DNA of 41,905 bases, from NCBI RefSeq assembly GCF_001194135.2, contig NC_068985.1:76388560-76430464 (forward strand). The letters are read 5' to 3'. Shown here one piece after another: positions 17,235-38,946 of this stretch. This stretch comes from Octopus bimaculoides (lineage: Eukaryota). Position 1 is the first letter of the stretch. The number at the start of each line of letters is the position of its first letter. Below the pieces are notes generated by a model that saw only the letters and a list, made by a program, of their open reading frames with translations, was not told the DNA's origin and searched no databases. Position numbers and translations under genes: made by a program.

Positions 17235-17425
17235 ATATGTGTGTATAGGGTTACATGGGTAATGATGAAGATCTACAAATCATTAATATATATATATAAA
17301 TCTATATATATATATATATTATGTGCATATACATATACATACATATATATATATATAGATACATATACACACATATATATAAATGTATATATATATATTA
17401 TATACATATAAATATATATATATAA
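17040..17425. repeat. Compound (TA)n-rich microsatellite containing a 40-bp SINE A tail scrap
   Basis: Directly visible; gtgtttcagccaagtggctgcggtcatgctggtgcaccaccg lies at about 17150-17190. Confidence 0.9.
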
Positions 17426-17428
17426 GTT

Positions 17429-17835
17429 AGGCATGGCTGTGTGGTAAGAAGTTTGTTTCCCAACCACATGGATCCGGGTTCAGTCCCACAGCATGGCACC
17501 TTGGACAAGTCTCTTCTACTATCGCCTCGAGCCAGCCAAAGCTTTGTGAATGGATTTGGTAGATGGAAACTGAAAGAAGCCTATCAAATATATATATATA
17601 TTCATGTGTGTGTCTTTGTGTCTGTGTTAGTGCCCTCCCACCATCGCTTGACAACCAATGTTGATGTGCTTACGTCCCTGTAACCTAGCGGTTCAGCAGA
17701 AGAGACCAATAGAATATGCACCAGGCTTACAAAGAATAAGTCCAGGGGTTGATTTCTTCAACTAAAAGGTGGTGCTCCATTATGGCCACAGTCAAATGAC
17801 TGAAACAAGTAAATGTGTAAAAGAATAAAAGAATA
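17429..17835 (+). mobile_element. SINE family A, full length
   Basis: Same head, core and internal microsatellite. The tail ends GTCAAATGACTGAAACAAGTAAA...AAAGAATAAAAG. Confidence 0.9.
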
Positions 17836-18087: not shown

Positions 18088-18289
18088 CTATCGCATATCT
18101 TCTTCATCTGAATCAACCATTATCTTTTGGTTATTGTCATGATAATTTGCCAAATGTATTTTTTGAACCGTTCTTTCACTTTCATTTGACTTTGGCCATA
18201 TAACTGGATGATATACATTATGTTTGGATGAATCTTCTGTAGATTTTGCTGGGCTGTTAATTACTTTAGCGGGAAGGATAATAACTTCA
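18088..18289 (-). CDS. Candidate alternative C-terminal coding exon, isoform 2: (S)EVIILPAKVINSPAKSTEDSSKHNVYHPVIWPKSNESERTVQKIHLANYHDNNQKIMVDSDEEDMR*
   Basis: Strong acceptor atatgtttttctgtttcag|T with a phase-2 start, also compatible with the 61-nt exon (ag+t=Ser). 66 open codons, seen in track ORF 18088..18324 whose ATG is intronic. A possible ATTAAA lies on the minus strand at 17944-17949. Confidence 0.65.
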
Positions 18290-18471
18290 CTGAAACAGAA
18301 AAACATATATTGTAATATGTACATAGATATATATATATATACATATATTTACATAATCAATGTTATTGATGATAGTGATGTTGATGATGGTGATGTTGAT
18401 GATGATGATGATAAGGAGGAGGAGGAGGAGGGGTTTGTTTATGTTAGTGTTTCATTATTACAGTTGTTATT

Positions 18472-19470
18472 AAGGTGGTGGGCTGGCAGAGTCATTACTA
18501 TTCCTGACAAAGTGATTGGCAGCATATTTTCCAACTTTACATTCAGAGTTCAAATGCCACCAGGGATGACTTCAGCTTTCATCCTTCTAAGGTCAATAAA
18601 ATAAGTACCAGTTGTGCACTGGGGTCGGTGTAAGTGACTGACACCTTCCTGGAAAGTTGCTGGCCTTGAGCAAAAATCTGAAACCGATATTATTGATGAT
18701 GATGCTAATGATGACAAGGAGCAAGAGAAAAAGGAAGAGGGGGATTTGTTTATGTTAATGTTTTATTATTTTAGTTGTTATTAAGGGGGTGAGCTGACAG
18801 AATCGTTAGCATGCTGGATAAAATGCTGAGCAGTATTTCACCCATCACTACATTCTGAGTTCAAATTCCGCTGAGGTTGACTTTGCCTTTCATCCTTTCA
18901 GGGTCAGTAAAATAAGTACCAGGGTAAAGGCTCCAAAAAGGGTCTCAGGGAATAATATCCCTGCCTCCCTGAGCTAGTTTTCCACCACATCTCTTAAAAA
19001 TTATGGTAGAAGCCTTGGTCTCGAGACCACTCATGTCTAGAAACCAAAATAAGTAAGGGCATGCTCCCTGCAGAAAATCCAGCTCCAAAAAAAAGCCTCA
19101 TGATAGCAAAGGAGAATGGGCACCAGCCAACCCAAAGGTCGGGATGGACTGCACCTGCCTACCTCAGTTGCTATGGCATTGAGGTAGATCTGGCCACCCC
19201 CATTAACAGGGACAAAACCCAGATTTAAAATGATGATGATGATGAACATTGGGGTTGATGTAATCGACTCATCCTCTCCCTCAAAACTGCTGTCCTTGTG
19301 GCAAATTTGAAGCCGTTATTATAGTTGTTATTATAGTTAGTAGAATCATTTGCATGCCAGATAAAATGCTTAGTGGCATTTTGTCAGTCTTTGCATTCTG
19401 AGTTCAAATTCCACAAAGATCCACTTTAACTTTCATCCTTTTAGGAGAAAATAAGTATCAGTCAAGCACT
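18472..19470 (+). mobile_element. Array of three decayed SINE family B units; unit 2 is interrupted by another element
   Basis: Units at about 18472-18685, 18783-19314 and 19335-19470, each preceded by agttgttatta. Confidence 0.8.
18923..19243 (+). mobile_element. Retroposon 3' fragment with a (GAT)n tail, inserted in SINE B
   Basis: Splits the family B body between gtaccag and cattggggttgatg. Contains gtaagggcatgctccctg and gaggtagatctggccaccc and ends in atgatgatgatgatg. Confidence 0.7.
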
Positions 19471-19705
19471 AGTGCCCTCACCCAAAATATCAGACCTTGT
19501 TCCAATAGTGAAAAAGATTATTATATTTGTTACTAGCATACCTGTGTCATCAAAAATGCCAACAGTTTTATAAATAATAGAAAATGGTGCATCAATAGAA
19601 TAGAGAAAGCAATTGATAAATGTCAACAATCTAGTAAATAAACATACATACACAGAATCGAAGCACTTGAACAATCACCCACATAATGTATGTGTGACAT
19701 ACACA

Positions 19706-19707
19706 AG

Positions 19708-19801
<94 letters not shown>

Positions 19802-19884
19802 CAAACATACATATGTACATATACATACATATATATGTAAATATAAATACTTATACATAATATGCACACATGAATATGTGTGTG

Positions 19885-19930
<46 letters not shown>
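19706..19930. repeat. (GC)n(CA)n plus (TA)n microsatellite
   Basis: Long uninterrupted CA run followed by a TA run. Confidence 0.95.
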
Positions 19931-19934
<4 letters not shown>

Positions 19935-20474
19935 TATATAGTTGAAATTCATAGAAAAACAAAAAACAAAGACAGGTGTATGAACAACAAGCAAATGTAT
20001 TAGCTTGATGCTCGGGAAAATGAAAAAGTTTTTTACGTTTCGAGTAATCAAGGACAGCATTCACTTGTACTTTCTTGTTATTGTTGTTTAGCTCTAAATC
20101 AACTCCAATTAAACCAGACCTAAGATTGATCAAAGTCGTTCTAGACATAACCATCCCCTGGTAAGTCTACAACCACATTATTTAAAACAGCAGGGTACTA
20201 TTTGAAGGAGAATTGTCTGCTATTTCTAGCAGGAGGAGTGACTCTGTGGATGCTCCCTTGTTGGTTTATCCAGTACCATGATAATAGATGAAAGTGAAAG
20301 AGCCTAAATTTATGAATATATCTTCAGTTATATTTTGGAAAGATATAATTCAAGATGATTGCATCATTAATAAAAAAATTTCCAACACTATCTCCAACTG
20401 TACAGTACACAAGAGCACCTATAAAATTTGAAACCACAACTCCATTCAACTGGCCACTTAATAAAATTGAACAT

Positions 20475-20615
20475 CATCATCATCATCATATTTGACACCC
20501 ATCATCCATGCTGGTTTGACAGGAGGTGGCAAACCAGAAGACTGCACCAAGCTCCACTGTCTGTTCTGGCATGGTTTTATGGCTGGATGCTTTCCTAATG
20601 CCAACCACTTTACAA
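20475..20615 (-). mobile_element. Family C, old copy
   Basis: (CAT)n...ccatgctgg...ggctggatgctttcctaatgccaaccactttacaaag. Confidence 0.75.
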
Positions 20616-21202
20616 AGTGGACTACCATTCATAAAATGCATAGTGCATACACACATACATATGTATGTATATACAAATATATGCAAAAACAACAAATCCA
20701 ATAAGAACTACTGTATCTAACTTTAAATTGATTAGAGAAAGAAAGGAAAGAGATGGATGTATAGAGAGAGGGAGAGATGGAGCTAGATTTCATTTAAAGA
20801 GAAAAATGGATAACTAGATCGATATAAAGTCTGTGAAAAGGAGAGAGACACACATATCTTACATTTGTTTGTAATATGAGAAATTTTGAATATATTCTTG
20901 AAAGTATTTTTTAGTAATTTATTCAGAGGAGGAAGGGCAATCCCCTGTCTCTTTTCAGGGTTCCCAGACCATTGGGAAAGAGAGCTTAGAAGTTATCCTT
21001 ATGCTAAAGTCCTGGCCCAAATACTTGCAATAGACTGGGTCTTACTAGAGGCATCCAAAGGCCAGGTGATAGCATTAAACTTGTTGACAGACTATGTCAG
21101 TTATTGAGAAACAGGCACCGTCACAGTTACTGGTTTCAACACAGTTTCCATTTATTGTATTTCAATTATACACTGCTTTGATTGACAATGAATGTCATAA
21201 AT

Positions 21203-22180
21203 GACACGTGCCTAAGTACTGCACAGCAGAATTGAAATTGGAACCACTTTGTTGTGGGTATGTGATAAGATTCAAAGCATTCAGCGGAACATAGCTTCAG
21301 TAGTCTAATTTGTAAAGTACTTTTAAATATAAAGATGAAAAATTTAACATTAAACTGATTAACTCAGTGTGTGTGTGTGTACATATGCATTTTTGTGTGT
21401 TCATGTGTATACATATGTTTTTGTGAATGTCAATATTCAAGTTTGTAAAATGGGTTCAAGACCAAAACTGTGCAAAGACTTCACACTGTTTATAAGCTAG
21501 TCACAAACGAAAGTAAAACTATACAGAAGACAAAATAAAAAGGGAAACTCGACAGGAAATGTTAGATAGACAGTGAGGAGAATATCAAGAAAACAAGGGG
21601 AAAAAAGTGTGGGGCGGAGGGTGAAATCATGAGGGTAAACCTTAATAAGGGATCTTTTTGTCATTCTATTTCATTACTGACATAATTAGAATCAAAAATT
21701 TTTTAAATCCTGTGATAAATTTTGCTAAATGGCTAAGCCTTGTAATGCAGCACATTAGTTTTCTTGTGTTTTTATTCCTGAACTGTTCTGTACCATATAT
21801 CATCATAATTTAAAATCCGTCATATTTGTGTACTTCCTAAGAGAAATCCATCACCCTACCAGAATAGTACCACTCACATTAAGAATGACATGTTTAGAAT
21901 AAAATTATATTTGGTTTATATTTAATGATAGCTGAAAGTTAGTTTGACCAATGAATATGGTAAAAGACACTTGTTTAAGGTGCAACACAATGGGATTGAA
22001 CCTGAATCCACTTAATTGTGCATATGTGATAAGATTATAAACCTCCAACAGAACATAGCTTCACTAGTCAAATTTCTAATGTGTGGGTGTGCATGTGTAT
22101 ATATGCATTTTTGTGTAAGTGTATATATATGTTCTTGTGAGTATGCTTATTCGAGTTTGTAAAATGGATTTTACACCAAA
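21203..22180 (+). repeat. Old local direct duplication of about 230-260 bp (21203-21465 and 21966-22180)
   Basis: Shared blocks in the same order: tatgtgataagatt, gaacatagcttca.tagtc.aattt, atatgcatttttgtgt, agtttgtaaaatgg. Confidence 0.8.
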
Positions 22181-22628
22181 ATTCAAAAGTGCTAAAAATA
22201 TTTCATACAAACATCCTCACTAAAACAAACATAGAGATGGCACCACACCTTAAATTCAAAATTACAGAAACTGAATTTAGAGTTAATGGAAAGGAAATTC
22301 ATAACAAAACTTACAGAAACAGATTAAATATGTTTACTGTTAATATACTCACCAAACCAAAACCAACATGCACATTACTGTAAGTGATTTATGAAGTATG
22401 GTGTTATGTACCAATATAATGAAATGGAATTAGGATAAAACAGAAACATTTGTGAATGAAATTATAGAAAACAAAAATCCCAGAAATCTCATGCAATTTA
22501 ATAGAATTATAAATAGTCGGCTTGAATATTCCAAAGAAGCATTTCCCGCACCAGGAGAAAAAGAGACAGACAGGTAAGGGGAAGAAGAAATAAGAGAAAA
22601 CAATGCTATGCTAAGAGTGAATCACCTA

Positions 22629-22779
22629 TTATAGGGATGTAGCATTGTTATTGACAGTGTCATCAGTTGTTCTTGGATTGGGGGAGTTCTTAAGCTGATG
22701 AAGCATTTCTCGTTGGTTAGCAAGCCGTCTTTCACGAAGTTCTGTCAGATTATAGGACACCATTTTAATGTTGCCATGT
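22629..22779 (-). CDS. C-terminal coding exon, isoform 1: (R)HGNIKMVSYNLTELRERRLANQREMLHQLKNSPNPRTTDDTVNNNATSL*
   Basis: Acceptor tttggtcaaatttcacttccag|A with a phase-2 start matching the 61-nt exon (ag+a=Arg). 49 open codons, CpG retained (cgt, cgg, cga) in a CpG-poor background. A possible donor AG|gtgatt lies 3 nt after the stop. Confidence 0.85.
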
Positions 22780-25604
22780 CTGGAAGTGAAATTTGACCAA
22801 AGAAATTGACACTAAATGAATGGAATTAAAAAATTTTCAGTAATGCAATTAGTTCTTATGATTCTCTTCAACCCCCATCTCTCACACTATATTTCCTTGT
22901 CATGGGTTCTTCTAATACTCATTAGTGAACATATTATTTTCTTTTTAATATATCTACATGGTTGGAATAACCATGTAGATATGCATCAAATGTAGGATTG
23001 TGGATTCAGAATACAATGAGCAATACCTAATTTGGCTCTCCAGTTTGATGGATCATTTGTCACTTTCAACACCAAGCATTCAATTGTTTTGTCAACTGGA
23101 CAACCAAAACTGTTAAATATGTAAGTGGCTGAGCATTCCAAAGACACATATACCTTTGAATAATTCTAAACCAAAACAGTATGACAATGCCGGACCATCT
23201 GAGAGGGTTCCATACAGTTTCTATTAATCCAATTTCGCTCACAAGGCTTTGAAAATGACCCTTATTCAAGATGTTAACACAATGACATCAAACATAAGAC
23301 CTCATGGTTTGAATTGAAATTTTATAACAATTTTTCAATACTTGCATCCAAATTTTTTTAGTTTCCTTCTAATAAATTATATTGAAGATATAATTTGATT
23401 CAGATGATTTGTGTACTTGTACCTTTAGTCTTTTTATTTTATTTCTGACAATTTGTTCAGTTTTTCATATCATTGACAATCTTCTGTAGGTCTCTGATTT
23501 CTAATTTTCTCCTTGTCCAAACATATTTTTATACATCTGTGATTCTGTTGTGCAATGTATCTTTTCTTTTTTTTTAAGATAGTCACGTCTGATTTGAGGG
23601 AGATTAAGATTAGTCTACTTTTTTTAAGTAAGTAAAAGTAACCACAGATAAGGTCCTTGGAACTATTTATTTTGTTGCTGTTGTTAACAAGTAGTCTCAG
23701 AACTTTGAATCAGATAGTGCTATAGCATGAAAATAATTAGAATTTGAAAGTAGGTAACAGTTCTTGCTCTATAAACATGTTAAAGTTCTGGAAGTGTATT
23801 GTTCATTCTGCCAAGTAAAGTCCTGCTGTGATGATGGCAATCAACATCATTTTACGTCCACTCAACCACAGTGGTACAAGTTAGATGGGTTACCTGAAGC
23901 AGGGTTTTACAATTGAATGCCCTTCTTGTCACCAAATTGTTTTCTCACCTCATACAAAATTGAGGAGTCAGTCTATTTTATCACCTTGACACACATGGTA
24001 TCTGCAATAATAGCAGTGCAGAAAATAAGTATATAACATCTATTTCAAATATTTTCACTCATTGTGCCACTGCACATTGTGTGTCACATATGATTTACAA
24101 GTGTGCTTCAAGCTTTGAGGTGAGCTGTAAAAAGCTAGGATATTTAGAAAATTTGAGTATTTTTAATGAATTGCACCCCGACATGTCTATTCCTCTGCAG
24201 CAAGGTGCAATGTGCAGTCATATTTTTAAAATAATTTTAATACTTCTTTATTTTTTTATGTATTTAATAAAGCATTTAAAAGCTGATGATGTGTCATAAC
24301 ACATTTGGGACTTTAACCAATCTGTTGTAGAGTAAAAAAAAGGTTGAAAACTGCTGCTCTATTTTGTTGTTCAGTAAAATTCTTAAAGTTCTAAGAAGGG
24401 TCCAGTTCCCAAATATCAGAATTCATGGTGCCCACACTTATCTATGGGTTTTATTATCAAATTTCTTTTTCCTTTTCCTGTCAGAGTCCATCACTATTTT
24501 CTCCAGCTTAAAGATTATTGTTGCAGTTTTCACAGACAGTCTGCTATAGATGAAGACGAGATGATAAGAATGCTAGGGCATTTCGAAGGATAGACTAGAA
24601 ATGGATGAAAGCCTAGACATAATTGATTATTGGGTATTTTCATCTGGTACTTTCCTTCTGGTTGTTATTTACCCCTAATCAAAGGGGCCTATAATCAAAG
24701 AAATCACATCTGTTTTTCACAGAAAATAATATACCTAGGACTATATTAACCAATGTATGCATCTCATTTTTTTTTTATAATGGCTTAGTCAGAGGAGAAA
24801 AGGAAGTGACCATGACCTTTTAAGGGCTTTTGAAACTGGTGGAAGGGAAGGAGGAAGTTATTTGTTAGTTGGTAGGATATGATTAATGGGAAATTTGACT
24901 GCTATTTCTAATAGGTTGAGCAGTTATCTAGAGGCTCCTTCATTGATGAGTTGTTTTATATTTTTATGTTGGTGGCAGTTGTTATGCCAACATCAATCAG
25001 CCTAATGGTTAAACTGTTAGACCTATGATAATAAGGCTTGTTTCCCTGCACAAGGCAACACATTGTCACCTTGGACAAAATACTCCATTTCATGTTGCTT
25101 TATTCCATTCAGTTGCATCTACTGTATACTCACCCAAAATCCAATAAATACAAAAAGTCAAGAGACCTTAGTTGCAACTACACACTGGAGGATAGTGTGT
25201 TATGTAGATAGTCAGCTGAACAAACAACTAAATGAGATCTACAGACATGTAGCTCTCAATATTTCCTTTTACACTCCTACTAAGTTGCTAATATGACTGT
25301 ATATCTTGTGAGTAGCTAAATATGTATTTGTAGTGGTTGTAATAGCTATAAATTAGAGATTAGCCATGGGCTGTAATCCTCCCCCACAATTGCCTACACA
25401 GTTTGATTATTCATTTAATTTATATCACAATTTATGAATGATGGCATCATTGATTGTAGTTTTCTCAAAGAAAAGAGCATCTACAATCTGGTGCCAATGA
25501 CTTAAATGTAAGAAAAGATTCTTCAAAGAGAAATCATTTTCCACCAAATTTTACATCCTTTGCCAATGTACATTGGCAAAAAATATAAACATACATATAT
25601 ACAT

Positions 25605-25673
25605 AGCCAAAGCCTTGTGAGTAGATTTAGTGAATGGAAACTGAAAGAAATCCATCACAAATACATACATACA

Positions 25674-25758
<85 letters not shown>

Positions 25759-25995
25759 CACATGATAGTTATATACAAGTGTTGCAATCATATAAATGAT
25801 GTCCTTCATTTGCAATCAACCATGAAATATGTCTGGTCATAGGGAAATAGTCACTTACTTGGAGGCAAGTGAGGGTTAGCAACAAGAAGGGCATCCAGCC
25901 ATGACAAAAAAAAAACACCTCAGCAAACTCTATCTGACCCATAGAAGCATGGAAAAGTGGACATTAAAAGAATAATGACAATGTTGATGATGCAC
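25605..25995 (+). mobile_element. SINE family A core with an alternative RTE-type tail
   Basis: Family A core, then (TACA)n/(TG)n, then ...gagggttagcaacaagaagggcatccagcc...gcatggaaaagtggacattaaa...gatgatg. Confidence 0.8.
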
Positions 25996-26140
25996 ACTTT
26001 CTGTCTATCAAAATCCCCCTCATGAGGCATTAGTCAACCTGAAACTTTAGTAGAGGACACTTTGCTCAAGGTGCCACACAGAGGGATCAAATCCAGAATC
26101 TCATGGTTGTGAAACAAACATCTTAACCACTTAGCCATGA
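25995..26140 (-). mobile_element. SINE family A head/core, decayed
   Basis: tttctgtctatcaaaatcc...tgctcaaggtgccacac...catcttaaccacttagcca. Confidence 0.7.
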
Positions 26141-26349
26141 TTGCAAGGATTTTCAAAGATATTTTCAATGACTACAATTAAGAATGACCAAGTTAAGTGC
26201 CCAGCGCCTGCAGTAACCACTATAGAACTATATAAATAAAAAATCTCTTGGATCATTGTATGGAAACCATGTAAATATGATAAACCAAGCTGCAGCAGTA
26301 AAAAAGATAGAAAGTATATAAATAGGAAACAAAAGCATAGAAATATTAA

Positions 26350-26550
26350 TTGCAGCAGCAGTAGTAGTAGTAATTGTAGTTGTAGTAGTAGTGGTAGTAG
26401 TAGCAGCAGCAGCAGAAACAGTAGCAGTTACTCTAAGAAGTAATAGTAATAGTAACAGCAGCAGCAACAGTAGTAGTAGTAGTAGTTACCCCAAGAATTG
26501 TAGCAGCAGCAGCAATAGTAATAGTAGTAGTAGTAGCAGTAGTAGTAGTA
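26350..26550. repeat. Compound (GCA)n/(GTA)n trinucleotide tract
   Basis: Directly visible; a related tract lies at 15690-15800. Confidence 0.9.
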
Positions 26551-26828
26551 ATCTCAGTAAACAACACTTCAAGTCAGTGTTTACTATATCATAATTAGAA
26601 TGTGTCTATTTGCTAATTAAGAATTTATTAGTATTAACAGCTACTGTAAAACATTGAGTTGTTGATATTGTTGTTGAACAAGACTTGATAGAAAACTAAT
26701 TAAAAAAAATTTAGACAAAGTATGAAAATTCAGTTTTATGTGAAATCAATTCTTTATGATACAGAATTATTTCCACTTTTTGTTTAAAAAAAATTAGGGG
26801 CTTACAATTACCACAAGTTTTTTTTTAA

Positions 26829-27048
26829 CCCTTTAGCATTCAGATTATTCTGTCAAATGCAATACTTATTTATTCACATTGTTTTGAATTTATCACCTAT
26901 TATCTTGTAGCTTTGATATTTCAATGATGTAATTGCTTATTTTAAGAATAACGTTATGGGATTTGTGGGAGAGGCTGGATCTGACCAGTTTAAGTATAAA
27001 ACAGGTAGAATATTTGAGCCTGATATGGCTAATTTAAATACTAAAGGA
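26829..27048. mobile_element. piggyBac-like MITE family P1
   Basis: TTAA on both flanks (26825-28, 27049-52) and TIRs CCCTTTAGCATT / aatactaaagga. Confidence 0.8.
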
Positions 27049-27675
27049 TTAAATTCTCAATTTTTTTTTTTTTTGCATACACCATTTAATTCATTACTGC
27101 CTAAGGTGCACTTTGGTCAACCTTTTCTGAGAAGTAGGCAACATGAATCACAGCTCATCTTCAGGTGGACCACACTGCTAAAAAGATTCAAAATAATTTT
27201 TCTTGTGGTATGCCATTCAGTTTGTCCATGACTAATTAAAATTAATGCCATTGAAGTCTTTGATTTATTTCCTATATTTCTCTTTCTGCAATTATGCAAG
27301 TTATTTTGACCCAAATGTCTTCCCAATGCTATTTTTACTTGAAAAAGGAATCTGTTCACTGATCAAAGCAGGTTTGAAAAGACTGTGCTTTTNNNNNNNN
27401 NNNNNNNNNNNNNNNNNNNNNNNNNNNNNNNNNNNNNNNNNNNNNNNNNNNNNNNNNNNNNNNNNNNNNNNNNNNNNNNNNNNNNNNNNNNNNNNNNNNN
27501 NNNNNNNNNNNNNNNNNNNNNNNNNNNNNNNNNNNNNNNNNNNNNNNNNNNNNNNNNNNNNNNNNNNNNNNNNNNNNNNNNNNNNNNNNNNNNNNNNNNN
27601 NNNNNNNNNNNNNNNNNNNNNNNNNNNNNNNNNNNNNNNNNNNNNNNNNNNNNNNNNNNNNNNNNNNNNNNNNNN

Positions 27676-27900
27676 TGTCTGTTTGTTCCCTACCACTACT
27701 TGACAACCAGTGTTGATGAGTTTACATCCCCATAACTTAGCTGTTCAGCAAAAGGAACTAATAGAATAAGTACCATGTGTAACAGAAAAAAAAAAAAAAA
27801 AGGACTAGGGTTGATTCATTCGACTAAAATTCTTCAAGGCAGTGCCCCAGCATGGCTGCAGTCTAATGACTGAAACAAGTAAAACATAAAAGATAAAATA
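27676..27900 (+). mobile_element. SINE family A 3' half after an N gap
   Basis: cttgacaacc...ataacttagc...gaataagtacc...cagcatggctgcagtctaatgactgaaacaagtaaa. Confidence 0.85.
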
Positions 27901-28420
27901 GAAGTAAATTTTGATTGATTTAGATTTTCTGTTTTTTATCAAACATCATTCAACACATCTTTCCACCTACTAAATAATCTCCATTCCTGCCATTAACCTA
28001 ATTCAATTATTTTCAATTTTTTTAAACTTAAGTTTTGTAATTATAGAAATTTGTTCCATCATTGTCCAAATATTGGCTTTTGAAGCAAAACTTTTTAAAA
28101 TTTAAGATTAAAACATGCACTTCTTGTTTGAAAGATGTTTAGGGTGTGGATATGGTTCTTGTCATTATTGTTTAGCCCCAAGTGGATCTTGTGCCTACTC
28201 AAGACAGTTGTCAAGGGACCTTTATGCATTCTGTGACTTGCTTCCAGTTAATAAATACTATAGGTCCCATACTTTGCTTTGCTTTTATGCTGTTGAGATG
28301 GCCCTGATTAGACTGAGCAGATTTATGAACAATAGTCATTTCCTCTATAACAGTCTATCTTACATTTTTTCAAACATAATGTACCTCAGACTATAATATC
28401 TTGTGACACATTTTCTTTAA

Positions 28421-29103
28421 CCCTTTAACATCATCATCATCATCATCGTTTAACGTCCGCCTTCCATGCTAGCATGGGTTGGATGATTTGACTGAGGACT
28501 GGTGAAACCGGATGGCAACACCAGGCTCCAATCTAATTTGGCAGAGTTTCTACAGCTGGATGCCCTTCCTAACGCCAACCACTCAGAGAGTGTAGTGGGT
28601 GCTTTTACGTGTCACCCGCACGAAAACGGCCACGCTCGAAATGGTGTCTTTTATGTGCCACCCGCACAAGAGCCAGTCCAGGGGCACCGACAACGATCTC
28701 GCTCGAAAAACCCCATGTGTCATTTGCACAACAGCCAGTCCATGGGCACCGGCAACGATCTCGCACGAAAGATATCATGTGTCGCCCGCACATGAGCCAG
28801 CCCAGGGGCACTGNNNNNNNNNNCCCGCACATGAGCCAGCCCAGGGGCACTGGCAACGATCCCACTCGAAAGATTTCATGTGTCGCCCGCACATGAGCCA
28901 GCCCTATCAAAAGTAATGCTTATATATTCATATTATTTTGAATTACTCATGTATTATCTGACAGCTTTCAGAGTTCAATGATGTGACTGTTTATGTTTAG
29001 AATGACAAATGTTGGGTAGGTGTGAGAGGCTGGATCTGGCCAGTTTGAATGCAAAACAGTAAGATTATTTGGGCCAGATATGGCCAGTTTAAATGCTAAA
29101 GGG
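28421..29103. mobile_element. piggyBac-like MITE family P1, interrupted by a SINE (28429-28904)
   Basis: ttaa|ccctttaaca at the left end and aatgctaaaggg|ttta at the right end. The interior at 28905-29103 aligns with 26850-27048 (gagaggctggatctg, gatatggc..tttaaat). Confidence 0.8.
28429..28904 (-). mobile_element. Family C, young copy with an internal 62-bp tandem array
   Basis: Same tail plus at least four units of atgtgtcgcccgcacatgagccagcccaggggcactggcaacgatc..., with a 10-N gap inside the array. Confidence 0.9.
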
Positions 29104-31204
29104 TTTAGCTGGTTGGTGAGATTTAAAGGAGATCTATTTATTATCTGCAGTACATTGAGCAGCCACAAAGAGACACATTTCTCAACCTGTTTACTTTTGG
29201 AGACCCCTTGAAATATATTCTATAATTCAAAGTACCCCTACATAAAAATTTTTATAACAATTTGTGATGAACAACAGAAGTAGTACTAGGTCAACATAGT
29301 AATCTGTGAATCATACTTAAAGCATTTGATCTTCATCAGTAGCAAATATCTACTAGCAACTACATGCTAAGACAAAATAAGCCACTACTGATATAGTAAA
29401 ACAGTGCTGGCTAATCACAACATCAGTGATTTTGTCTTAGCATGCAGTTATTAGTGGATACTTGCTACTAATAAAGCCCAAAGAGGCAAGGATACATATT
29501 TATCAATGCCACCACTGCTGCTGGGCGATTTTTATCTGATACTGATATATTTTTAATTCTATACATCCTTAAGAGATAGATACCTTCTCAAGATAAATAT
29601 CACAGTTTATCAGGCTCTCAACAATGTACATGCTGCTTTTAAAACATTTTACTAATATTTTGTCTTTCTCTTTCAAAAGGCTGAAACTAGTTTATGCCAA
29701 AAATAACTGAAGTTTTTCTTAAGTTTACTGACAATACGAAAAATAAAAAAAAAGAACAGAAATCAGACAGCTTGTTCACAAAACTTCTTGATAAGGATTT
29801 CATTTGGACAATAAAATATCAAACATATCAAGTATTCACAAAAAAATATATATATATATATAAATGACCAGCATTGTATATAAAGCATCAGATTTCATGA
29901 AGAAATTTTTGAGAAATTTCATCCTAACTAAAACATTATCTAGACTAAATTATTCAGTATTTCCCAATTAAGAGGTGATTCTTTTTCCTCTGGGGTTTCC
30001 TTACCACCTAAAGATGTCAGGATTTCCCTACTTTAGGGAATATATTGTGCATCATAATCCTCATTTAACTACTGCTTTGCATGTGCATGTATAATAAAAT
30101 TTTAAATATAGAATTAAACACAAAAATAATTTGAAAAATATATTTGAATTTAATTAGTCTATTTGTCACATTTCAGACAACTCCCAGTCACTTTATAAGG
30201 ACACCAAGGCTTCCAGGAAAATGTGGCTGAGAAATACTGGCATAATGTTTCCTCATTGGCTCCAAGAGTTTAATAATCTGTTGTCAGTGAATTTTATGCC
30301 AGAGTTTGTTGTCTGTCCCCTGTAGTTTAGTAAACTAGGCCAAGTAGAATGAAATGTACTGTAAGAATTTTGACTTCTCATTAGAAAAATTACTTTTATA
30401 ACTTTAGCAGATCCTCTGACTAAATTTTAAAAAGGGCAGTGCTTATGACCTTTTTTTGTATGGTATCCAAAATTGATTAGAGAAAGAAAGGAACTCATGG
30501 ATTATTGTTAGGCCAAAAACCTGATCTCAATACTTTTCATGAAATGGGCTCTGCTCAAGGAACCCAATGACAAGGCGGTGGTGCTAAACCCAATGATGTA
30601 TTACATTTAGCAACCTCTTAAATTCTTGACCAATGAATCTCAAGTTAGATACTCTGAACTAGCATAAAAGCAATTGAACTAATCATTTTCCGTTTGACTG
30701 TTTAGCTAGGTAGAGACATAGGATCATAGCTAATTTATTCAAGACTTTTGTCATGTTGTTGGTAATGTAACGTTTTTCTTAGCTCAGACGTCAATAGATA
30801 AGTTTTCTTGGTGCAGTCTTCAACCTGATAATGCAGTGGTTCCATTTTGGTGGGTAATACCTTCAGAGTTTGTTCTATCAGTCGGCTCATAATGTTGCAT
30901 TATCCCTGTTTCATAACTGGTCCCTTCCTCAGTGAGTAGAATTTCAAGAGTAGAACATACAAGGATCATGAGCACAACCAAGCCTTCTCAACAACAAATG
31001 GCATAAAACATGCATTAATTTTTGATGATATATATGTATGTTTAGCAAGTTATTTAATCTAAGATTCTATGTTGAAATTATAATGGTTTGTCCAGATTTA
31101 TAAATCTGTCTTATCTAGGGTTAGCTCTTCATTCCCTCACTCAGTCTGCTTCATTTTTATCTCCCATTCTCCATCCATTTTTTCACTCTGTCTCTATCTG
31201 TCTC

Positions 31205-31211
31205 TGTCTGC

Positions 31212-31270
<59 letters not shown>
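31205..31270. repeat. (CT)n microsatellite
   Basis: Directly visible, about 100 bp into the intron downstream of the 61-nt exon. Confidence 0.95.
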
Positions 31271-31363
31271 TTCTCTAACTCTGTCATTTACTTTCAATTT
31301 TTTCTATGATAATGGCACACAAAATGAAGGTAAACTGATAACAGAAATAAATGTATATTTTAC

Positions 31364-31424
31364 CTGCTTGGCGTCTTCCCATTGCCAGTAATGACTATTG
31401 GTGATATTTTTTTAACTTTGTTGC
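31364..31424 (-). CDS. 61-nt internal exon of the cytoplasmic tail: (G)NKVKKISPIVITGNGKTPS
   Basis: Acceptor ttattattttatag|GC and donor CAG|gtaaaa. Only one of the three frames is open, and it is the one that joins the phase-1 end of the TM exon (g+gc=Gly). The exon ends in phase 2. Confidence 0.85.
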
Positions 31425-31874
31425 CTATAAAATAATAAAAATTTATTTCTGATTATACAATGGTATAATGATCATCTTATTATAAACATTAAAACACATA
31501 CATATTCTGTTACTTTATTTATTATAGTTTTTTCTGGTAATAGAGGAATATAATAGCAGTTTAAAGGGGTTTTTTTTTTTTGTACATATGTTCATTAAAA
31601 CTCTACTTCACTGCAACTCTTAAAATTCAAAATATATTATTTACAGTCACATATTTGAACTAGTATCATCTTGATAGTTACTCTCTAAGCTTCTTCCGTT
31701 GCTAATAATATTCAGTAATTATCTCCAAATTTGGAGCCAAACCCTTCATAGAATTCATGGGTGTGGACTGTAAATTATTCTCATTCCACTGTCAATGCTT
31801 TAGATACACTTCTCTTAGTTATTTTCCTGCTTCTGACATTTCTTGCTCATTTTTTCAAATCAGAGTATAAATAG

Positions 31875-32037
31875 AGGCAGGCGTGGATATGAGTGGTAAG
31901 AATCTTGCTTCTCAACCATATGGTAGTGGGTTCAGTCCTTGGGCAAGTGTTTTCTATTATAGCCTTGTGCCAGCCAAAGCCTTGTGAGTGGATTTGGTAG
32001 ACAGAAACTGAAAGAAGCCTACTGTATATATATATGC
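31875..32037 (+). mobile_element. SINE family A head/core
   Basis: Core GCCTTGTGAGTGGATTTGGTAGACAGAAACTGAAAGAAGCC is intact. Confidence 0.85.
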
Positions 32038-33040
32038 ATAAGAACAAAAACAACAAAGCCCTTTGAATTTAATAAAGGATTCAGTTTGAAATACTGTAAA
32101 CATTACCAAATATAACAGGCACCTGCAAAATGTCATACAATGACCAAAGCATTAAAAGTGTAACAACCAAGATGAGGGAAAATGTCAGTGTATAATGATG
32201 TTAATCCCTATCTTAGATATCTAAGACATTCCGACCAAAATAACGTGCGTGTGCGTGTGAGTGTGTGTGTGTGTGTGTGCACACGCGCATGTGTGTGTGT
32301 GTGCATGAGCATGCATGTTATGTATGTAAGTTCTTTATTTATATTGTTTGAAAAGTGATTTGATTTGAGATCATGCGTCATGCCATGACTATGTCAATTG
32401 TAGAGTCTTTGTACTCATTAAAATCACATTTACATTGTTATATATCTATTTACACTATATTATGATTTTTGATAATAATTGCAAGCATCAAATATGTATA
32501 TCTAATTATATTAGGTATCACAGTGTTTTAAGTTTCGATATCATTTATGACCTGATCACTGGCAATTCTTTTCCCTATTATCTATAAAATTAATCAGTAA
32601 TGGAAATATCATCATTAAATTATGTAAAATTCTTTGTAAAAGACTAGCTGTCCCTAACAGAAAAATTATTAAGCTGCCTTTCAATGTCTGTAACTTGATG
32701 TAACAAAAAACAGGGAAAAAATTTACACTTGGTTCATTTAAACAATAACAATAGATTATCCTATAAAGTGGAGAGAATCTCAAAATACAAGCCATGTCAG
32801 CAAGATTATTATACAGTCTGTCAATTTTACATCTGCTTAGTGCAATATTTTTAACAAGTATTTTCTATCCAAAGAACTCTTAATCTCTTCTCTGCATTTT
32901 GCATTTGTGTTGAGTTGTTAGGGTTTCCCAACTTAACAACAGAATGCTAACTAAAATTGAATTTAAACACTTAGCTGAAATATATAGAGCAATCCATACC
33001 AAATAATACCAAAATAAAAAGCAGAAAAATTATGATTTAA

Positions 33041-33271
33041 CCTTCCCATAATTCGATCTTTTTGTTACCATATTTCTGTTGAAATACACCCTCTTTATTT
33101 CAATTAATTTTGAAAATAATCACGAATTTACTAAAATGTCTTGATCATTACTAATCTAGTGGTTGCAACATAAATTAACATGGAAGCTTAATGGGAAATT
33201 TTATTTAGATCACCTTAAAATGGGAAGTTTGCATCAGAAGCAAAGACAGTTTTGGGTTGGTATCAAAAGAG
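33041..33271. mobile_element. piggyBac-like MITE family P2
   Basis: TTAA flanks (33037-40, 33272-75), homologous to 9327-9681. Confidence 0.75.
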
Positions 33272-33440
33272 TTAAACCATTCCTAAATTTTACTAGAATC
33301 TTCCATTCACTAATTAGTATGCTAATTTTTGTATTTCACATATATCTCGCAGAATCTTTAACAAAAATTCTGTGAAGGCCACTTGTAGCAAAATAAACAA
33401 CATAGGATTATAAATCTTTAGCCACAGCTAAAAATTTTAT

Positions 33441-33621
33441 GGCATTCTTTCATTTATGACTACTAAGGTTCTGGTTGATCTGATCAATGGAACAATCTGC
33501 TCGTGAAATTAACATCCAAGTGGCTGAGTACTCCACAGACATGTATACCCTCAACATAATTCTCAGGGAGATTCAGCATGACACAGAGTGCAACAAGGCT
33601 GGCCCTTTGAAATACAGGTAC
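33441..33621 (-). mobile_element. SINE-like family E fragment
   Basis: tgctcgtgaaattaacatccaagtggctgagtactccacagac...caaggctggccctttgaaatacaggtac. A decayed relative lies near 23110-23160. Confidence 0.6.
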
Positions 33622-34067
33622 TGATGTTTAAGCACAGCATAAACATCTCAACCTAAATGCATTGCTAAGAAACTTGGATGCATATCCAAAGAAGAAATAG
33701 TTATTTTTGGATAGAAAGCACCTGTCAAAAGAAATAGTTCCTTATAAGTTGTGAATTACTTCTCTTTACTTATGCCTCAAGTGTATATGTTAATCATGAT
33801 ATAGACTTGCTTTTCACTATCATATAGCGTGGTCATCTGATTGATTCAACATTCATGAAAATTAAAGTAATGACAAAAGTCGTCAGTTCAATATAAATAA
33901 TTATACTCTACACATCTACACCATATATCAAGTATTTTCTGTCTTGTTCATCAAGATACAAAATCCAAATGAATACAGCCTTATTTAAATACTACCAAAA
34001 ATCTTCTCTGTTACTCAAATCTACTAACCTACCACCCAGTAAATTTATATACATAAGGATTACTTAC

Positions 34068-34202
34068 CACAAGGGCAACGTTTTTTCAGATGCTTCCAGA
34101 AGTAAGCCACGAAAATTATCACCAAAAGCAATAGAGTTAGGACAACTACTATAATAACAATTGCAGTTGTACTAAGTCCAGCATTATCACTTTTTTTCTC
34201 CC
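34068..34202 (-). CDS. Internal exon encoding the transmembrane helix of a type I membrane protein: EKKSDNAGLSTTAIVIIVVVLTLLLLVIIFVAYFWKHLKKRCPC
   Basis: On the minus strand: acceptor gtattggtgttttccag|GG and consensus donor TG|gtaagta. The 135-nt exon is open, with phase-1 introns on both sides. A 23-aa hydrophobic stretch is followed by a basic stop-transfer sequence (WKHLKKR) and juxtamembrane cysteines (CPC). Confidence 0.9.
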
Positions 34203-34756
34203 CTGGAAAACACCAATACATTTATTGATTAGTTCTGGCTTCTAGTTTGAATAACAAAGATAATATTCACTTATAATGAACTTTTGAGTTCAAGACAAAT
34301 AGTAGAATAAATTTTATGTCATGTGAAAGAAGAGAAATATGATGGTTCCACTAAAATCCTTTACTGTATAGAGATTATGTCCACTAGTGTTGCAGGGTAA
34401 ATAAATTTATCAATGCCATAAGGCAATGAATTCGTAAAGACAATAGAGTGTCAGATAGAATATTTTATAATCATTGTTTCTGTACTTTATGCTATAAGTT
34501 CAAATCCTGCCAAGAAATTTTTGTCACTAAGATTCTTTTGTCCACAACAAATAAAATACCTGTCCAGAGTGGTGGGTTAGTACAATTATTAACGTTTCAG
34601 ATGAAGTTTCTTGTGTTCACTGTTCTAGGTTGTTTATTTTATGAGTTCAAATTCCATCTCTTCTCATAAACTTCACCATGCTAGGAATGATGTGACAACA
34701 GGCTAACAAAAGCACCTCCATGTTGAATGTAGATTAATTCAGAAGAATTAGATTTA

Positions 34757-36040
34757 TCAGGTTATCCCATAAGTTCTGTCTGAATTTTGAATAAAGAAAA
34801 CAAGTGATCAAATGTTATATTTAATTGAAATTTAATCATCAATGTACCTTCCCTGATTATCTATGACTTCCTTCTATCTATTTACAAGCTTTTTTAATCC
34901 CATCAACATAAAACTTTATTGGTTTCAAAGCGAAGAACTCTGAAATGTCAGTTTTGGCCTCCTCCTGGCTTGCGAAAGTTATGTCCCCCGAATGATTCTG
35001 TAAACTACGAAACAAATGGTAGTCTGAAGGAGCAAGGTTGGGAGAATAAGGTGGATGAGGAATTTTTTCCCAATGAAGCTCTTCGATCTTCTGTGATGTG
35101 ATCTTTGCAGTGTGGGGTCGTGCATTGTCCTGATGAAACATCTCTCCTTTTCAATTCACTAAAGCAGGTCTTTTTTTCTTCAAAGCTTGGTTCAAACGCT
35201 CTAATTGCTGACAGTAGACTTGAACATTGATTATTGCATTAGGTGGTAACAATTTAAAGTGAATTACTCCTTTGCAATCCCACCAGATAGAGAGAAGAAC
35301 CTTTTTCCCATGAAGTTACCTTCTCGGTTGTGGTTGAGCCTTTTCCTTTTACCAAGCTACTGTTTACGATGTTTAACATTTCCATAAAAGATCCATTTTT
35401 GGTCACCAGTCACAAGTCTACCAAAGAGGGTGAAATGAGTTTGTGAGAATGGAGAAAAGAGCAGATGTCAACTCAGGATTTGCGGTTGCTTTCGGACAAT
35501 TCATGAGGCACACATTTTCCAAGTTTAGGAACCTTTCCAAGTTGTTGAAGATGACAATGAATAGTTGTATGGTTTGAACTAAGCTTTATTGCCAATTCTT
35601 CAACTGATAATGCAGGATTTTCTTCAAGTAATGCCTTAAGGAGCTTATCCTCAAATTCAACTGGACGTCCTGTTCGATCTTCATCTCCAAGGCTGAAATC
35701 TCCACTTCTGAATTTTGCAAACCATCTTCTGCAAGTTCTTTCATTCAAGCATTCTGTCCCATAAACTGAGTGTGTTTTGAGTCACTTCAGCTGCAGAGTT
35801 TCCTTTTTTGTTCTCATAAAGCATTATGTGCCTCAAATGCTCTTTGGATACTTCCATGTTAGAAAGGGTTTTAATCAAAGAAATTTTAATTCTATTATTC
35901 TGTAAAACAATATTTAATAGGTTAAATGTACACAAATGCATAAAAATAATTTTTAATTCCATTAGACATTCTAAAATACTATTAAATTTCATTCAATTTC
36001 AAAAAGGGTAAAATCGGACAGAACTTATGAGATGACCTGA
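34757..36040 (-). mobile_element. Full-length (about 1.28 kb) decayed mariner DNA transposon
   Basis: Imperfect TIRs tcaggttatcccataagttctgtc / gacagaacttatgagatgacctga, TA on both flanks (34755-56, 36041-42), and an internal transposase pseudogene. Confidence 0.95.
34832..35857 (-). pseudogene. Mariner transposase pseudogene (several frameshifts and stops)
   Basis: Fragments MEVSKEHLRHIMLYE, RTCRRWFAKFRSGDFSLGDEDRTGRP, GKCVPHELS (cf. WVPHEL), VTGDQKWI, HQDNARPHTA and HPPYSPNLAPSDYHLF (cf. YSPDLAPSD). Confidence 0.95.
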
Positions 36041-36213
36041 TATTAGGTCAAAGTTAAATCAAATTTGAAGTTTACTTCATATACTGGTTTAATGGCCTAT
36101 TAACTCAAAGCAAGATGTTATCAACATATATAAACTTTATAGAAATAGCTGTTGAGTCTCTTTCTCTGAAAGAAGTAACTCAGCTAATAAAAATAACAGT
36201 TAAATCTTTCCCA

Positions 36214-36251
<38 letters not shown>

Positions 36252-37329
36252 TCTCAGACATCTTAAAAATAAAGGAAATATGTATTTGGTAATGCTCTCC
36301 TCAGTACAGTGTCTTCAGATAAAAGGACCAAAGGCAAAGTTGACTTAGGCAGGAGTTGAACTAGGTTCTCAAAGTGTTGGTGTAAAAGACTGTAAAGCTA
36401 CGACAGTCATAACTGGAAAGGGCTGGTCAAATGTTAGCATGATCAAAGATGAGCTGGAGCTAAAACAAAAATACATATTGCAGTTGATCCAAGTGAGCCT
36501 CTATATAATCACTCCAGCAACTAGAAATATCAGCTAAATCTCTTTATCTTTACCAAATTGCACATTATATCTTAAATCAGGAAGGACACAATAACTAATA
36601 AAGCTATATTTGAAAAAAAAAAGACACGATTAGGAAGGTGACAGGGTCATCAAGGAGCAACAACAAACAACAACACCATCAGTAACACTAAACAACAACA
36701 ATATTTTAATCAATGATCAAACAAGTAGAAACATTTGCTTGTTTTTCTTGAAGACATTCACACACAAAAGTGTCTGTTTGTGTGGATGGGTGAAAAATAG
36801 CATTAGGGGTAACAAGATTTCAATAGGGCAATCACTGGTTCACTGTATTTATGACAGTGAGGGTAACAAGGGAACATACAGTCACTTGTCTAAGGTGATA
36901 CCCAGAGGGATTGAACTCAGAATTACGAATTTGTGGAGTGAAATGCTTAATAACATAGCCATTACTTGTGGCCAAAGATTATGCTAATAATTTGTAAATT
37001 CACAATTGTTAATAGTATTGTAGTAATGCTTTGACAGGGAAGCCACTGGAGAATGGAATTGTGATGTCATACATACTGAATGCTAAGTAAACATTCTGAA
37101 AAGCAAGGTGCAAGAAGGTGATAAATATATAGACCAAAGGTGGTAGTTGATAATTTAGAGGCTTGTAATATTCCTTTGGAGAAATCGCATTTTTAATGCA
37201 TGTGGTTGTGTGGCAAGAAGCTTGCATGTGCAAACCAGAGTGGTTATTGTAACCATAATGACAACACAGCTAAATTTAGCACTGTTGTGGATTAAGTCTA
37301 CAAAAAGATATTAGCAGTGCAGCCTGAAG

Positions 37330-38830: not shown

Positions 38831-38946
38831 TCCCTCCATTTATTCATTAATCATCATTTTTTTCATTCACATAACATTATGTCTATGTCCAGCCCGCAGC
38901 TTCCTTTTTCTGTATGAGGCCTTTATGGCCAATCTTGATGAAATAA

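What the first reader, a model, noticed from the sequence alone, without database searches (positions are those of the whole stretch)
18088..34202. Hidden spliced gene: 3' end of an unidentified type I membrane protein
Four minus-strand exons have canonical AG/GT sites and chain in the correct phases (1, 1, 2). They give ...EKKSDNAGLSTT-[23-aa TM]-KHLKKRCPC-GNKVKKISPIVITGNGKTPS-(R or S)-tail. Three of the four are absent from the ORF track. I cannot name the family; the ectodomain lies beyond the window or in exons I could not confirm.
Basis: partly seen in the sequence, partly recalled or inferred. Interest (0 to 1): 0.7.

Follow-up and report, generated by a model that had tools for sequence, protein, structure and literature searches.

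The report
Unconfirmed membrane-anchor exon in octopus DNA
One of the four proposed exons, which encodes a clean membrane-spanning segment between strong splice signals, stands out from chance, but the other three exons are no better than chance and no related protein exists in any database searched, so this is at most an unproven candidate gene.

Summary
All four minus-strand segments exist as described. They have AG/GT boundaries and chain in phases 1, 1, 2. Both assembly gaps lie inside the putative second intron, so no codon depends on them.

Only E1 (34202..34068) beats chance. Its summed splice-site score ranks 2nd of 125 open AG..GT candidates in the window. It holds the only membrane-spanning-like stretch not made by a microsatellite. 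It stays the only such exon candidate in about 125 kb of octopod strand sequence even at much looser thresholds (0 of 300 simulated windows at E1's own thresholds).

The rest of the chain carries no weight. Seven equally good phase-compatible alternatives to E2 exist, and eleven to E3a/E3b. The composition and CpG signals are weak.

No homolog was found: 5.8 billion clustered proteins, an exhaustive phmmer search of 1.84 billion representatives, Pfam and PDB. A control query did recover an Octopus sinensis RefSeq protein, so annotated octopus proteins were within reach.

The 7.7 kb upstream holds no signal peptide, ectodomain exon or domain, only a dead mariner transposon and a retroelement ORF.

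My estimates: E1 is a real exon of an unannotated, lineage-restricted single-pass membrane protein, about 50%. The whole model is right, about 15-20%. It is all chance, about 35-40%. Interest is low until RNA or cross-species evidence exists.

The parts
34068..34202 (-). E1: candidate internal exon, 135 nt, entered in phase 1 and left in phase 1. It encodes a juxtamembrane stretch, a membrane-spanning segment and a basic stop-transfer stretch.
   Evidence: Sequence read. PWM scores are acceptor 5.4 and donor 5.6, rank 2 of 125 open AG..GT candidates on both strands. It is the only candidate with a clean membrane-spanning-like stretch in the window plus the O. sinensis locus L001, even at thresholds of 3/3/2.5. 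0 of 300 simulated windows gave one at E1's own thresholds. GC is 0.37 against 0.29 in the flanks.
34096..34164 (-). Predicted membrane-spanning segment AIVIIVVVLTLLLLVIIFVAYFW (23 aa). It is preceded by EKKSDNAGLSTT and followed by KHLKKRCPC.
   Evidence: The best 19-residue Kyte-Doolittle mean is 3.72. The other stretches in the window with a mean of at least 2.8 are microsatellite or low-complexity translations such as VCVC, LLLL, VVVV and IIII. Pfam gives only sub-threshold hits of the membrane-segment type.
34219..34221 (-). In-frame ATG, 6 codons upstream of the E1 acceptor, in the same ORF (MYWCFPG-EKKSD...). This is an alternative start for a small N-out signal-anchor protein.
   Evidence: ORF 34063-34221; sequence. 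The base at -3 is T, a poor Kozak context (read from the sequence).
31364..31424 (-). E2: candidate 61-nt internal exon (GNKVKKISPIVITGNGKTPS), phase 1 in and phase 2 out.
   Evidence: Sequence. The sites are weak by PWM (acceptor 1.4, donor 2.5). It is the nearest of 7 equally good phase-compatible candidates downstream of E1.
22629..22779 (-). E3a: candidate terminal exon (R-HGNIKMVSYNLTELRERRLANQREMLHQLKNSPNPRTTDDTVNNNATSL-TAA).
   Evidence: Sequence. Acceptor score 1.5. It holds 3 CpG in 148 nt where the surrounding kilobase is poor in CpG, and its ORF ranks 18 of 250 by CpG density. Its composition score ranks 10 of 69 in a fair control.
18088..18289 (-). E3b: alternative candidate terminal exon (S-EVIILPAK...NVYHPVIW...MVDSDEEDMR-TAG).
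   Evidence: Sequence. Acceptor score 4.35. Its composition score ranks 11 of 69 and its ORF ranks 35 of 250 by CpG density. It abuts an (ATC)n-like microsatellite at 18290-18450.
27393..27675 (.). Assembly gap 1, inside putative intron 2.
   Evidence: The right flank is a dispersed repeat.
28814..28823 (.). Assembly gap 2, inside putative intron 2 and within a 78-bp tandem duplication.

Best explanation
E1 (34202..34068, minus strand) is most likely a genuine coding exon. It would supply the membrane anchor of an unannotated, lineage-restricted single-pass membrane protein.

Inferred mechanism: the 23-residue hydrophobic segment spans the bilayer. The polar stretch EKKSDNAGLSTT lies outside or in the lumen. 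The basic stretch KHLKKR holds the C-terminal side in the cytosol, following the positive-inside rule. The two cysteines in RCPCG next to the membrane are possible palmitoylation sites. A short, probably disordered cytosolic tail follows.

Shown here: the exon-like anatomy of E1 and its statistical rarity.

Inferred only: that E1 is transcribed and spliced, its topology, and everything downstream of it. E2 and then E3a or E3b are one possible completion (I give the whole chain about 15-20%). The real downstream exons could be different ones or lie outside the window.

The N-terminal part is also open. It either lies more than 7.7 kb upstream, beyond the window, or the protein simply starts at the in-frame ATG at 34221. 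In that case it is a small N-out signal-anchor protein of about 120-140 aa with no ectodomain.
For: - E1's splice sites are the second best of 125 open AG..GT candidates on both strands. The best one lies inside a real retroelement ORF.
- Only 39 acceptors and 23 donors of E1's strength occur in 83.8 kb.
- E1 holds the only hydrophobic span in the window that is not made by a microsatellite.
- In 300 third-order Markov simulations of the window, strong-site open exons occurred 0.37 times per window. None held a membrane-spanning-like stretch.
- With thresholds loosened to 3/3/2.5, E1 is still the only hit in both strands of the window plus a 20.8-kb O. sinensis locus.
- The charge layout around the segment fits a stop-transfer anchor (read from the sequence).
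- GC and CpG are raised over the flanks in all four segments. CpG o/e is 0.42-0.57 against 0.26 for the window. The ORFs rank 18, 33 and 35 of 250.
- None of the four segments lies in a repeat found within the window.
- Published work reports that the original O. bimaculoides gene models are fragmented and miss terminal exons (bioRxiv 10.1101/2022.06.11.495763). An unannotated exon is therefore not implausible.
Against: - There is no homolog at all. The search for homologous proteins gave nothing for E1+E2+E3a+E3b. An exhaustive phmmer search of 1.84 billion representatives gave 0 hits at E<=1e-3.
- All non-repeat minus-strand ORFs of at least 38 aa from 13.9 to 41.9 kb gave nothing.
- The same database returned an O. 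sinensis RefSeq protein for a control ORF. An annotated octopus ortholog should therefore have been seen.
- Pfam shows only sub-threshold membrane-segment noise. PDB shows nothing.
- No upstream exon, signal peptide or domain lies in the window.
- The splice PWM is a generic metazoan one, not trained on octopus. The thresholds were set after seeing E1.
- E2, E3a and E3b are not separable from chance.
- No transcript evidence could be consulted.
Confidence: 0.5

Rival explanations
1. Chance. The region is repeat-rich non-coding DNA, either intergenic or a large intron. E1 is a fortuitous open frame whose AT-rich codons happen to spell a hydrophobic run between a GTAAGT and a pyrimidine-rich AG. 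The other three exons were picked from many available in-phase options.
For: - No homolog exists in any protein set, including one shown to hold O. sinensis RefSeq proteins.
- No Pfam or PDB match.
- A chain is guaranteed by chance once E1 is given: 7 alternatives to E2 and 11 terminal alternatives.
- E3a and E3b rank only 10-11 of 69 in the fair composition control.
- ORFs of 53-86 aa are expected many times over in a 33% GC window.
- The window is otherwise made of microsatellites, SINE-like repeats, a dead mariner and a retroelement ORF.
- Across a genome scan of tens of thousands of windows, a per-window chance of about 1e-3 still yields dozens of E1-like false positives (inference).
Against: - E1 combines three independently rare features at one site. 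Nothing like it appears in 300 simulations or in about 125 kb of real octopod strand sequence at loose thresholds.
- All four segments have about twice the window's CpG o/e.
Confidence: 0.37
2. This is the 3' end of a larger type I membrane protein. Its signal peptide and ectodomain exons lie beyond the window's right end. It runs E1-E2 and then has two alternative terminal exons, E3a and E3b. This is a sub-case of the best explanation, not exclusive of it.
For: - The strong E1 acceptor in phase 1 implies an upstream coding exon.
- E2 is the nearest phase-compatible candidate.
- E3a and E3b are the two nearest long phase-compatible terminal candidates, and the only ones of the 11 that do not look like repeat junk.
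- Intron sizes of 2.6, 8.6 and 13 kb are ordinary for octopus genes (general knowledge).
- The E3b tail carries a YxxPhi motif (YHPV) and an acidic cluster (DSDEED), as in sorting signals of trafficking receptors. This is recalled from knowledge and short enough to arise by chance.
Against: - A larger protein with an ectodomain should be easier to annotate and should have homologs, yet nothing matched.
- No ectodomain exon or domain lies in the 7.7 kb upstream.
- E2's sites are weak.
- The tails are not significant in a fair control.
- E3b's acidic end abuts a microsatellite.
Confidence: 0.15
3. Relic. E1, and perhaps E3a and E3b, are leftovers of a once-functional gene, a duplicated gene fragment, or an exon carried by an unrecognised mobile element. 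The splice signals and frame survive but nothing is expressed as protein now.
For: - E1 looks exon-like, yet no partner exons can be established and no annotated protein contains it.
- Transposon relics lie within 0.7-3.6 kb: mariner at 34881-35992 and a retroelement ORF at 37794-38178.
Against: - A relic of a duplicated gene should still resemble its parent, but no parent was found in 1.84 billion representatives.
- E1 is not repeated within the window or in L001.
Confidence: 0.1

Closest known systems
Small single-pass (bitopic) membrane proteins with a short cytosolic tail, for example the glycophorin A type (Pfam PF01102)
   Same: Polar, Ser/Thr-containing stretch next to the membrane, one hydrophobic span of about 23 residues, a basic cluster right after it, and a short tail. 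Pfam's best weak hits are of this type.
   Different: The score is 14.6 bits against a gathering cut-off of 30.1. The match covers only the hydrophobic span. There is no detectable sequence relationship to any protein.
Type I receptors whose cytosolic tails carry YxxPhi plus acidic-cluster sorting signals (furin / CI-MPR style). Recalled from knowledge; a lead, not a test.
   Same: The E3b tail contains YHPV and DSDEED near its C-terminus. Cysteines lie next to the membrane in E1.
   Different: The motifs are short and expected by chance about once per tail (YxxPhi), or lie beside a microsatellite (the acidic run). There is no ectodomain, no signal peptide and no homology. It is not established that E3b belongs to the transcript.
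Octopus protocadherins, the large lineage-expanded type I family in octopus genomes (general knowledge)
   Same: Type I topology in an octopod genome.
   Different: No cadherin repeat or any Pfam domain occurs in minus-strand ORFs upstream of E1. No hit to any protein. Here the membrane-spanning segment sits in its own small exon.

Membership tests
Expressed protein-coding gene (the claim 'hidden spliced gene') | Canonical splice sites of good quality at every junction | tested here: inconclusive
   E1 has acceptor 5.4 and donor 5.6, rank 2 of 125. E2 has 1.4 and 2.5, which is weak. E3a has 1.5 and E3b has 4.35. The PWM is generic, not trained on octopus.
Expressed protein-coding gene (the claim 'hidden spliced gene') | An in-phase open chain beyond what chance gives | tested here: not met
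   There are 7 phase-compatible alternatives to E2 and 11 terminal alternatives of at least 40 codons.
Expressed protein-coding gene (the claim 'hidden spliced gene') | A homologous peptide in related species | tested here: not met
   0 hits. A positive control found an O. sinensis RefSeq protein. Only annotated proteins were searched, not octopod genomes.
Expressed protein-coding gene (the claim 'hidden spliced gene') | Transcript or junction evidence | not testable with these tools
   No RNA-seq or cephalopod transcript resource was reachable. The E1 ORF is not on record.
Expressed protein-coding gene (the claim 'hidden spliced gene') | Coding-like composition relative to local non-coding ORFs | tested here: inconclusive
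   CpG density is in the top 14% of 250 control ORFs. Amino-acid score: E3a and E3b are in the top 2% against stop-to-stop ORFs, but only ranks 10-11 of 69 against acceptor-to-stop controls.
Type I single-pass membrane protein | One hydrophobic span of about 20-25 residues with basic residues on its cytosolic side | tested here: met
   23 residues with a 19-residue Kyte-Doolittle mean of 3.72, followed by KHLKKR.
Type I single-pass membrane protein | A cleavable N-terminal signal peptide | tested here: not met
   No initial-exon candidate with a hydrophobic N-terminus splices into E1 in phase 1 within 34203-41905. It could lie outside the window.
Type I single-pass membrane protein | An extracellular domain upstream of the membrane-spanning segment | tested here: not met
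   Pfam on all minus-strand ORFs of at least 30 aa upstream finds only mariner transposase domains. No protein homolog was found for ORFs of at least 38 aa.
Glycophorin_A (PF01102) | Score at or above Pfam's gathering cut-off | tested here: not met
   14.6 bits against 30.1.
DUF3377 (PF11857) / GAPT (PF11770) | Score at or above Pfam's gathering cut-off | tested here: not met
   15.2 bits against 26.5, and 12.9 against 21.1.

The most novel reading that the evidence does not exclude
This is an octopod-restricted orphan gene, possibly of recent or de novo origin, that two or more annotation efforts missed. It encodes a small single-pass membrane protein of about 120-140 aa. It has two alternative cytosolic tails, one of which carries endocytic and acidic-cluster sorting signals.
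Probability: 0.12. Interest if true: 0.4.

Novelty: new member of a known kind. Interest (0 to 1): 0.2.

Why it matters
If E1 is real, it marks a gene missing from current octopus annotations, with no relatives outside the lineage. That would be a small addition to the catalogue of cephalopod-specific membrane proteins and a reminder that these annotations miss short multi-exon genes. It would not change any general picture. If it is chance, the case shows that an in-phase AG/GT chain in a 33% GC genome carries almost no evidential weight. Only the quality of individual exons does.

Tried and rejected
1. Homology with the spliced peptide carrying both tails: word-indexed search and exhaustive phmmer. 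Nothing.
2. Homology with every non-repeat minus-strand ORF of at least 38 aa from 13.9 to 41.9 kb, to catch hidden ectodomain exons or any annotated gene that would give an orthologous locus. Nothing.
3. Pfam on the models and on all upstream minus-strand ORFs. Only mariner domains.
4. Using the O. sinensis locus of the control hit as an orthologous region. It is not syntenic and shares only dispersed repeats.
5. Exact-product look-ups of the E1 ORF and the retroelement ORF: not on record.
6. Back-translated pattern scans of metagenome and prokaryote genome contigs for E1, E3a and E3b, hoping for host contamination (searches failed on length). Nothing.
7. PDB sequence search, Rfam and tRNA scans for intron-hosted RNAs that would betray a host transcript. 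Nothing.
8. Poly(A) hexamers after both stops. They are present at +130 and +142, but such hexamers occur every ~420 nt here, so this is uninformative.
9. Amino-acid composition as coding evidence. It looked significant against stop-to-stop ORFs but not against a fair acceptor-to-stop control, so I do not rely on it.
10. Reading the plus-strand ORF at 37794 as a neighbouring gene with a shared promoter. Rejected: its only relative is a gag/ORF1-like protein with a CCHC knuckle.


Full report
**What the window is.** It is 41,905 bases at about 33% GC. It is heavily CpG-depleted (o/e 0.26) and full of (TG)n, (TA)n and trinucleotide microsatellites and dispersed SINE-like repeats. It has four N runs. 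The only protein relative found for anything in it is an Octopus sinensis RefSeq protein. The species itself is not known to me.

**Step 1, the observation.**

All four minus-strand segments are present with the stated boundaries and phases.
- E1 is 34202..34068, 135 nt. Acceptor ttttccag|GG, donor G|gtaagt.
- E2 is 31424..31364, 61 nt. Acceptor ttttatag|GC, donor CAG|gtaaaa.
- E3a is 22779..22629. Acceptor cttccag|A, ending in TAA.
- E3b is 18289..18088. Acceptor gtttcag|T, ending in TAG.
The split codon after E2 is AGA (Arg) with E3a and AGT (Ser) with E3b.

The program asked for the gaps to be tested first.
- Both gaps (27393-27675 and 28814-28823) lie between E2 and E3a/E3b, in the putative intron 2. 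No exon or split codon touches them, so the frame is independent of their length.
- The right flank of gap 1 is a dispersed repeat. Gap 2 sits inside a 78-bp tandem duplication.
- Two things do depend on the gaps: whether the two halves of the model are physically linked, and whether a small exon is hidden there.

**Step 2, is it more than chance?**

I scored all AG..GT-bounded open segments of 50-400 nt on both strands with a simple generic metazoan splice PWM.

E1 stands out.
- It ranks 2nd of 125. Rank 1 lies inside a genuine retroelement ORF.
- It is the only candidate with both sites scoring at least 5.
- The window has only 39 acceptors and 23 donors of E1's strength in 83.8 kb.
- 22 ORF stretches in the window reach a 19-residue Kyte-Doolittle mean of 2.8. 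All but E1 are microsatellite or low-complexity translations such as VCVC, LLLL, VVVV and IIII.
- In 300 third-order Markov simulations, strong-site open exons occurred 0.37 times per window. None held a membrane-spanning-like stretch.
- With thresholds relaxed to 3/3/2.5, E1 remains the only hit in both strands of the window plus a 20.8-kb O. sinensis locus.

The remainder does not stand out.
- Downstream of E1 there are 7 phase-compatible internal-exon candidates at least as good as E2.
- Downstream of E2 there are 11 phase-compatible terminal candidates of at least 40 codons.
- Given E1, an in-phase chain is therefore certain by chance.

Soft signals for the other exons are weak.
- All four segments have GC above their flanks and CpG o/e of 0.42-0.57 against 0.26 for the window. 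Their ORFs rank 18, 33 and 35 of 250 control ORFs by CpG density.
- An amino-acid composition score puts E3a and E3b in the top 2% of stop-to-stop ORFs. Against a fair acceptor-to-stop control they rank only 10th and 11th of 69, close to repeat-derived junk and above two real transposon ORFs. I treat this as weak.

**Step 3, outside evidence.**
- The peptide with both tails found nothing in the 5.8-billion-cluster protein set.
- It found nothing in an exhaustive phmmer search of 1.84 billion representatives.
- It found nothing in PDB.
- In Pfam it gave only sub-threshold matches of the membrane-segment type: Glycophorin_A 14.6 bits against 30.1, DUF3377, GAPT.
- As a control, the plus-strand ORF 37794-38178 recovered O. 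sinensis LOC115225585 at E = 1.7e-49. Annotated octopus proteins are therefore in the database, and an annotated ortholog of a 115-130-residue C-terminal region should have been seen.
- A third search used every non-repeat minus-strand ORF of at least 38 aa from 13.9 to 41.9 kb. It also found nothing.
- No protein encoded by the window itself appeared in any search. Whatever annotation of the source genome is in the database does not include these exons.
The one O. sinensis locus I could fetch is not syntenic.

**Step 4, the surroundings.**
- Upstream of E1 on the minus strand lies a frameshifted mariner (Mos1-type) transposase relic at 34881-35992 (HTH_48 and Transposase_1).
- At 37794-38178 on the plus strand lies a gag/ORF1-like retroelement ORF. 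Its O. sinensis relative has a CCHC knuckle.
- No minus-strand ORF upstream carries any other Pfam domain.
- Only 7 donors score at least 2.5 in the 7.7 kb upstream. None closes an ORF in phase 1 with a start codon or a usable acceptor. At a threshold of 0 the few candidates are microsatellite or transposon translations, and none has a signal peptide.
- So nothing in the window supports an ectodomain.
- An in-frame ATG at 34221, six codons before the acceptor, allows a different reading: a small N-out signal-anchor protein that starts in this very ORF. Its Kozak context is poor (T at -3).

**Step 5, the most likely working.**

If E1 is real, it supplies a stop-transfer or signal-anchor membrane span.
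- The polar, Ser/Thr-containing stretch sits outside.
- 23 hydrophobic residues sit in the bilayer.
- KHLKKR sits on the cytosolic face (positive-inside rule).
- Two membrane-proximal cysteines may be acylated.
- A short tail follows.

With E3b the tail would carry YHPV (a YxxPhi motif) and DSDEED (an acidic cluster), which resemble sorting signals. Both are short. One abuts a microsatellite. I hold this as a lead only.

The anatomy and its rarity are shown. Transcription, splicing, topology and the identity of the tail exons are inferred.

**Step 6, comparison with known families.**
- It works like, at most, a generic small bitopic membrane protein.
- It is not a member of any family I could test. 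Every Pfam match is below cut-off and limited to the hydrophobic span.
- There is no cadherin or other ectodomain, so it is not a protocadherin.
- There is no sequence relative anywhere.

**Verdict.**
- E1 is a real exon of an unannotated, lineage-restricted single-pass membrane protein: about 0.5.
- The whole four-exon model including both tails: about 0.15-0.2.
- Pure chance: about 0.35-0.4.
- Relic exon: about 0.1.
- Published experience that the first O. bimaculoides gene models miss terminal exons (bioRxiv 10.1101/2022.06.11.495763) keeps the positive reading alive. The complete absence of homologs keeps it from being more than a candidate.
- Interest is low until junction reads or cross-species conservation are checked.

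Noticed in passing
window 34881-35992, minus strand: A dead mariner (Mos1-type) transposase split over at least three frames. The HTH_48 part lies around 35476-35992 and the DDE C-terminal part (Transposase_1, E = 3.6e-19) at 34881-35150. It lies 0.7 kb upstream of E1.
   Followed up: partly
window 37794-38178 (+), and 38217-38522 (+): An intact 129-aa ORF (ATG..TAA) in a patch richer in GC and CpG. It is 66% identical to the first ~130 residues of O. sinensis LOC115225585, a 281-aa single-exon protein with a CCHC knuckle (CLEPGHIKKNC), so it is a gag/ORF1-like retroelement protein. The window's copy diverges after about residue 129. A second 102-aa ORF follows in another frame with no relatives.
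   Followed up: partly
window 3918-4084, 28430-28579, 41760-41879 (also 3489-3697, 41426-41577); L001 8520-8730 and 2155-2280: A SINE-like dispersed repeat. Copies within the window are 97% identical to each other and 78-86% identical to copies in the O. sinensis locus. Other families recur at 9850-10208, 17417-17830, 27680-27900 and 10961-11144.
   Followed up: no
window 10474-10728: Nearly the same peptide (CDSxLKGIILLLVRPRKLHHFLSAxTHFLCPYV...) is read from both strands. This indicates an inverted repeat (palindrome) of about 250 bp, possibly a small foldback or MITE-like element. A weaker self-complementary stretch lies at 29325-29482.
   Followed up: no
window 20959-21065, plus strand: An open AG..GT segment with a very strong acceptor (8.3) and a protein-like translation (FPDHWERELRSYPYAKVLAQILAIDWVLLEASKGQ). 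It ranks third by splice-score sum.
   Followed up: no
window 22400-22810, both strands: The patch around E3a is open in several frames on both strands. One example is the plus-strand ORF 22434-22574 (DKTETFVNEIIENKNPRNLMQFNRIINSRLEYSKEAFPAPGEKETDR), which has the best composition score of all 250 control ORFs. The patch is locally richer in GC and CpG. The 'exon-like' look of E3a may therefore be a property of the patch rather than of one frame.
   Followed up: no
window 26130-26600: A long trinucleotide-repeat block that reads as poly-Leu, poly-Val/Ala, poly-Thr or poly-Ser depending on frame and strand. Similar (TG)n/(TA)n blocks lie at 14.6-17.4 kb, 19.7-20.0 kb and 39.9-40.1 kb. These create most of the window's long ORFs and false membrane-spanning-like stretches.
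   Followed up: yes
whole window: CpG o/e is only 0.26 overall. It is higher (0.5-1.1) only in repeat or retroelement patches at about 8-8.5, 10-11, 12-13.5, 28-29 and 38-39 kb.
   Followed up: no
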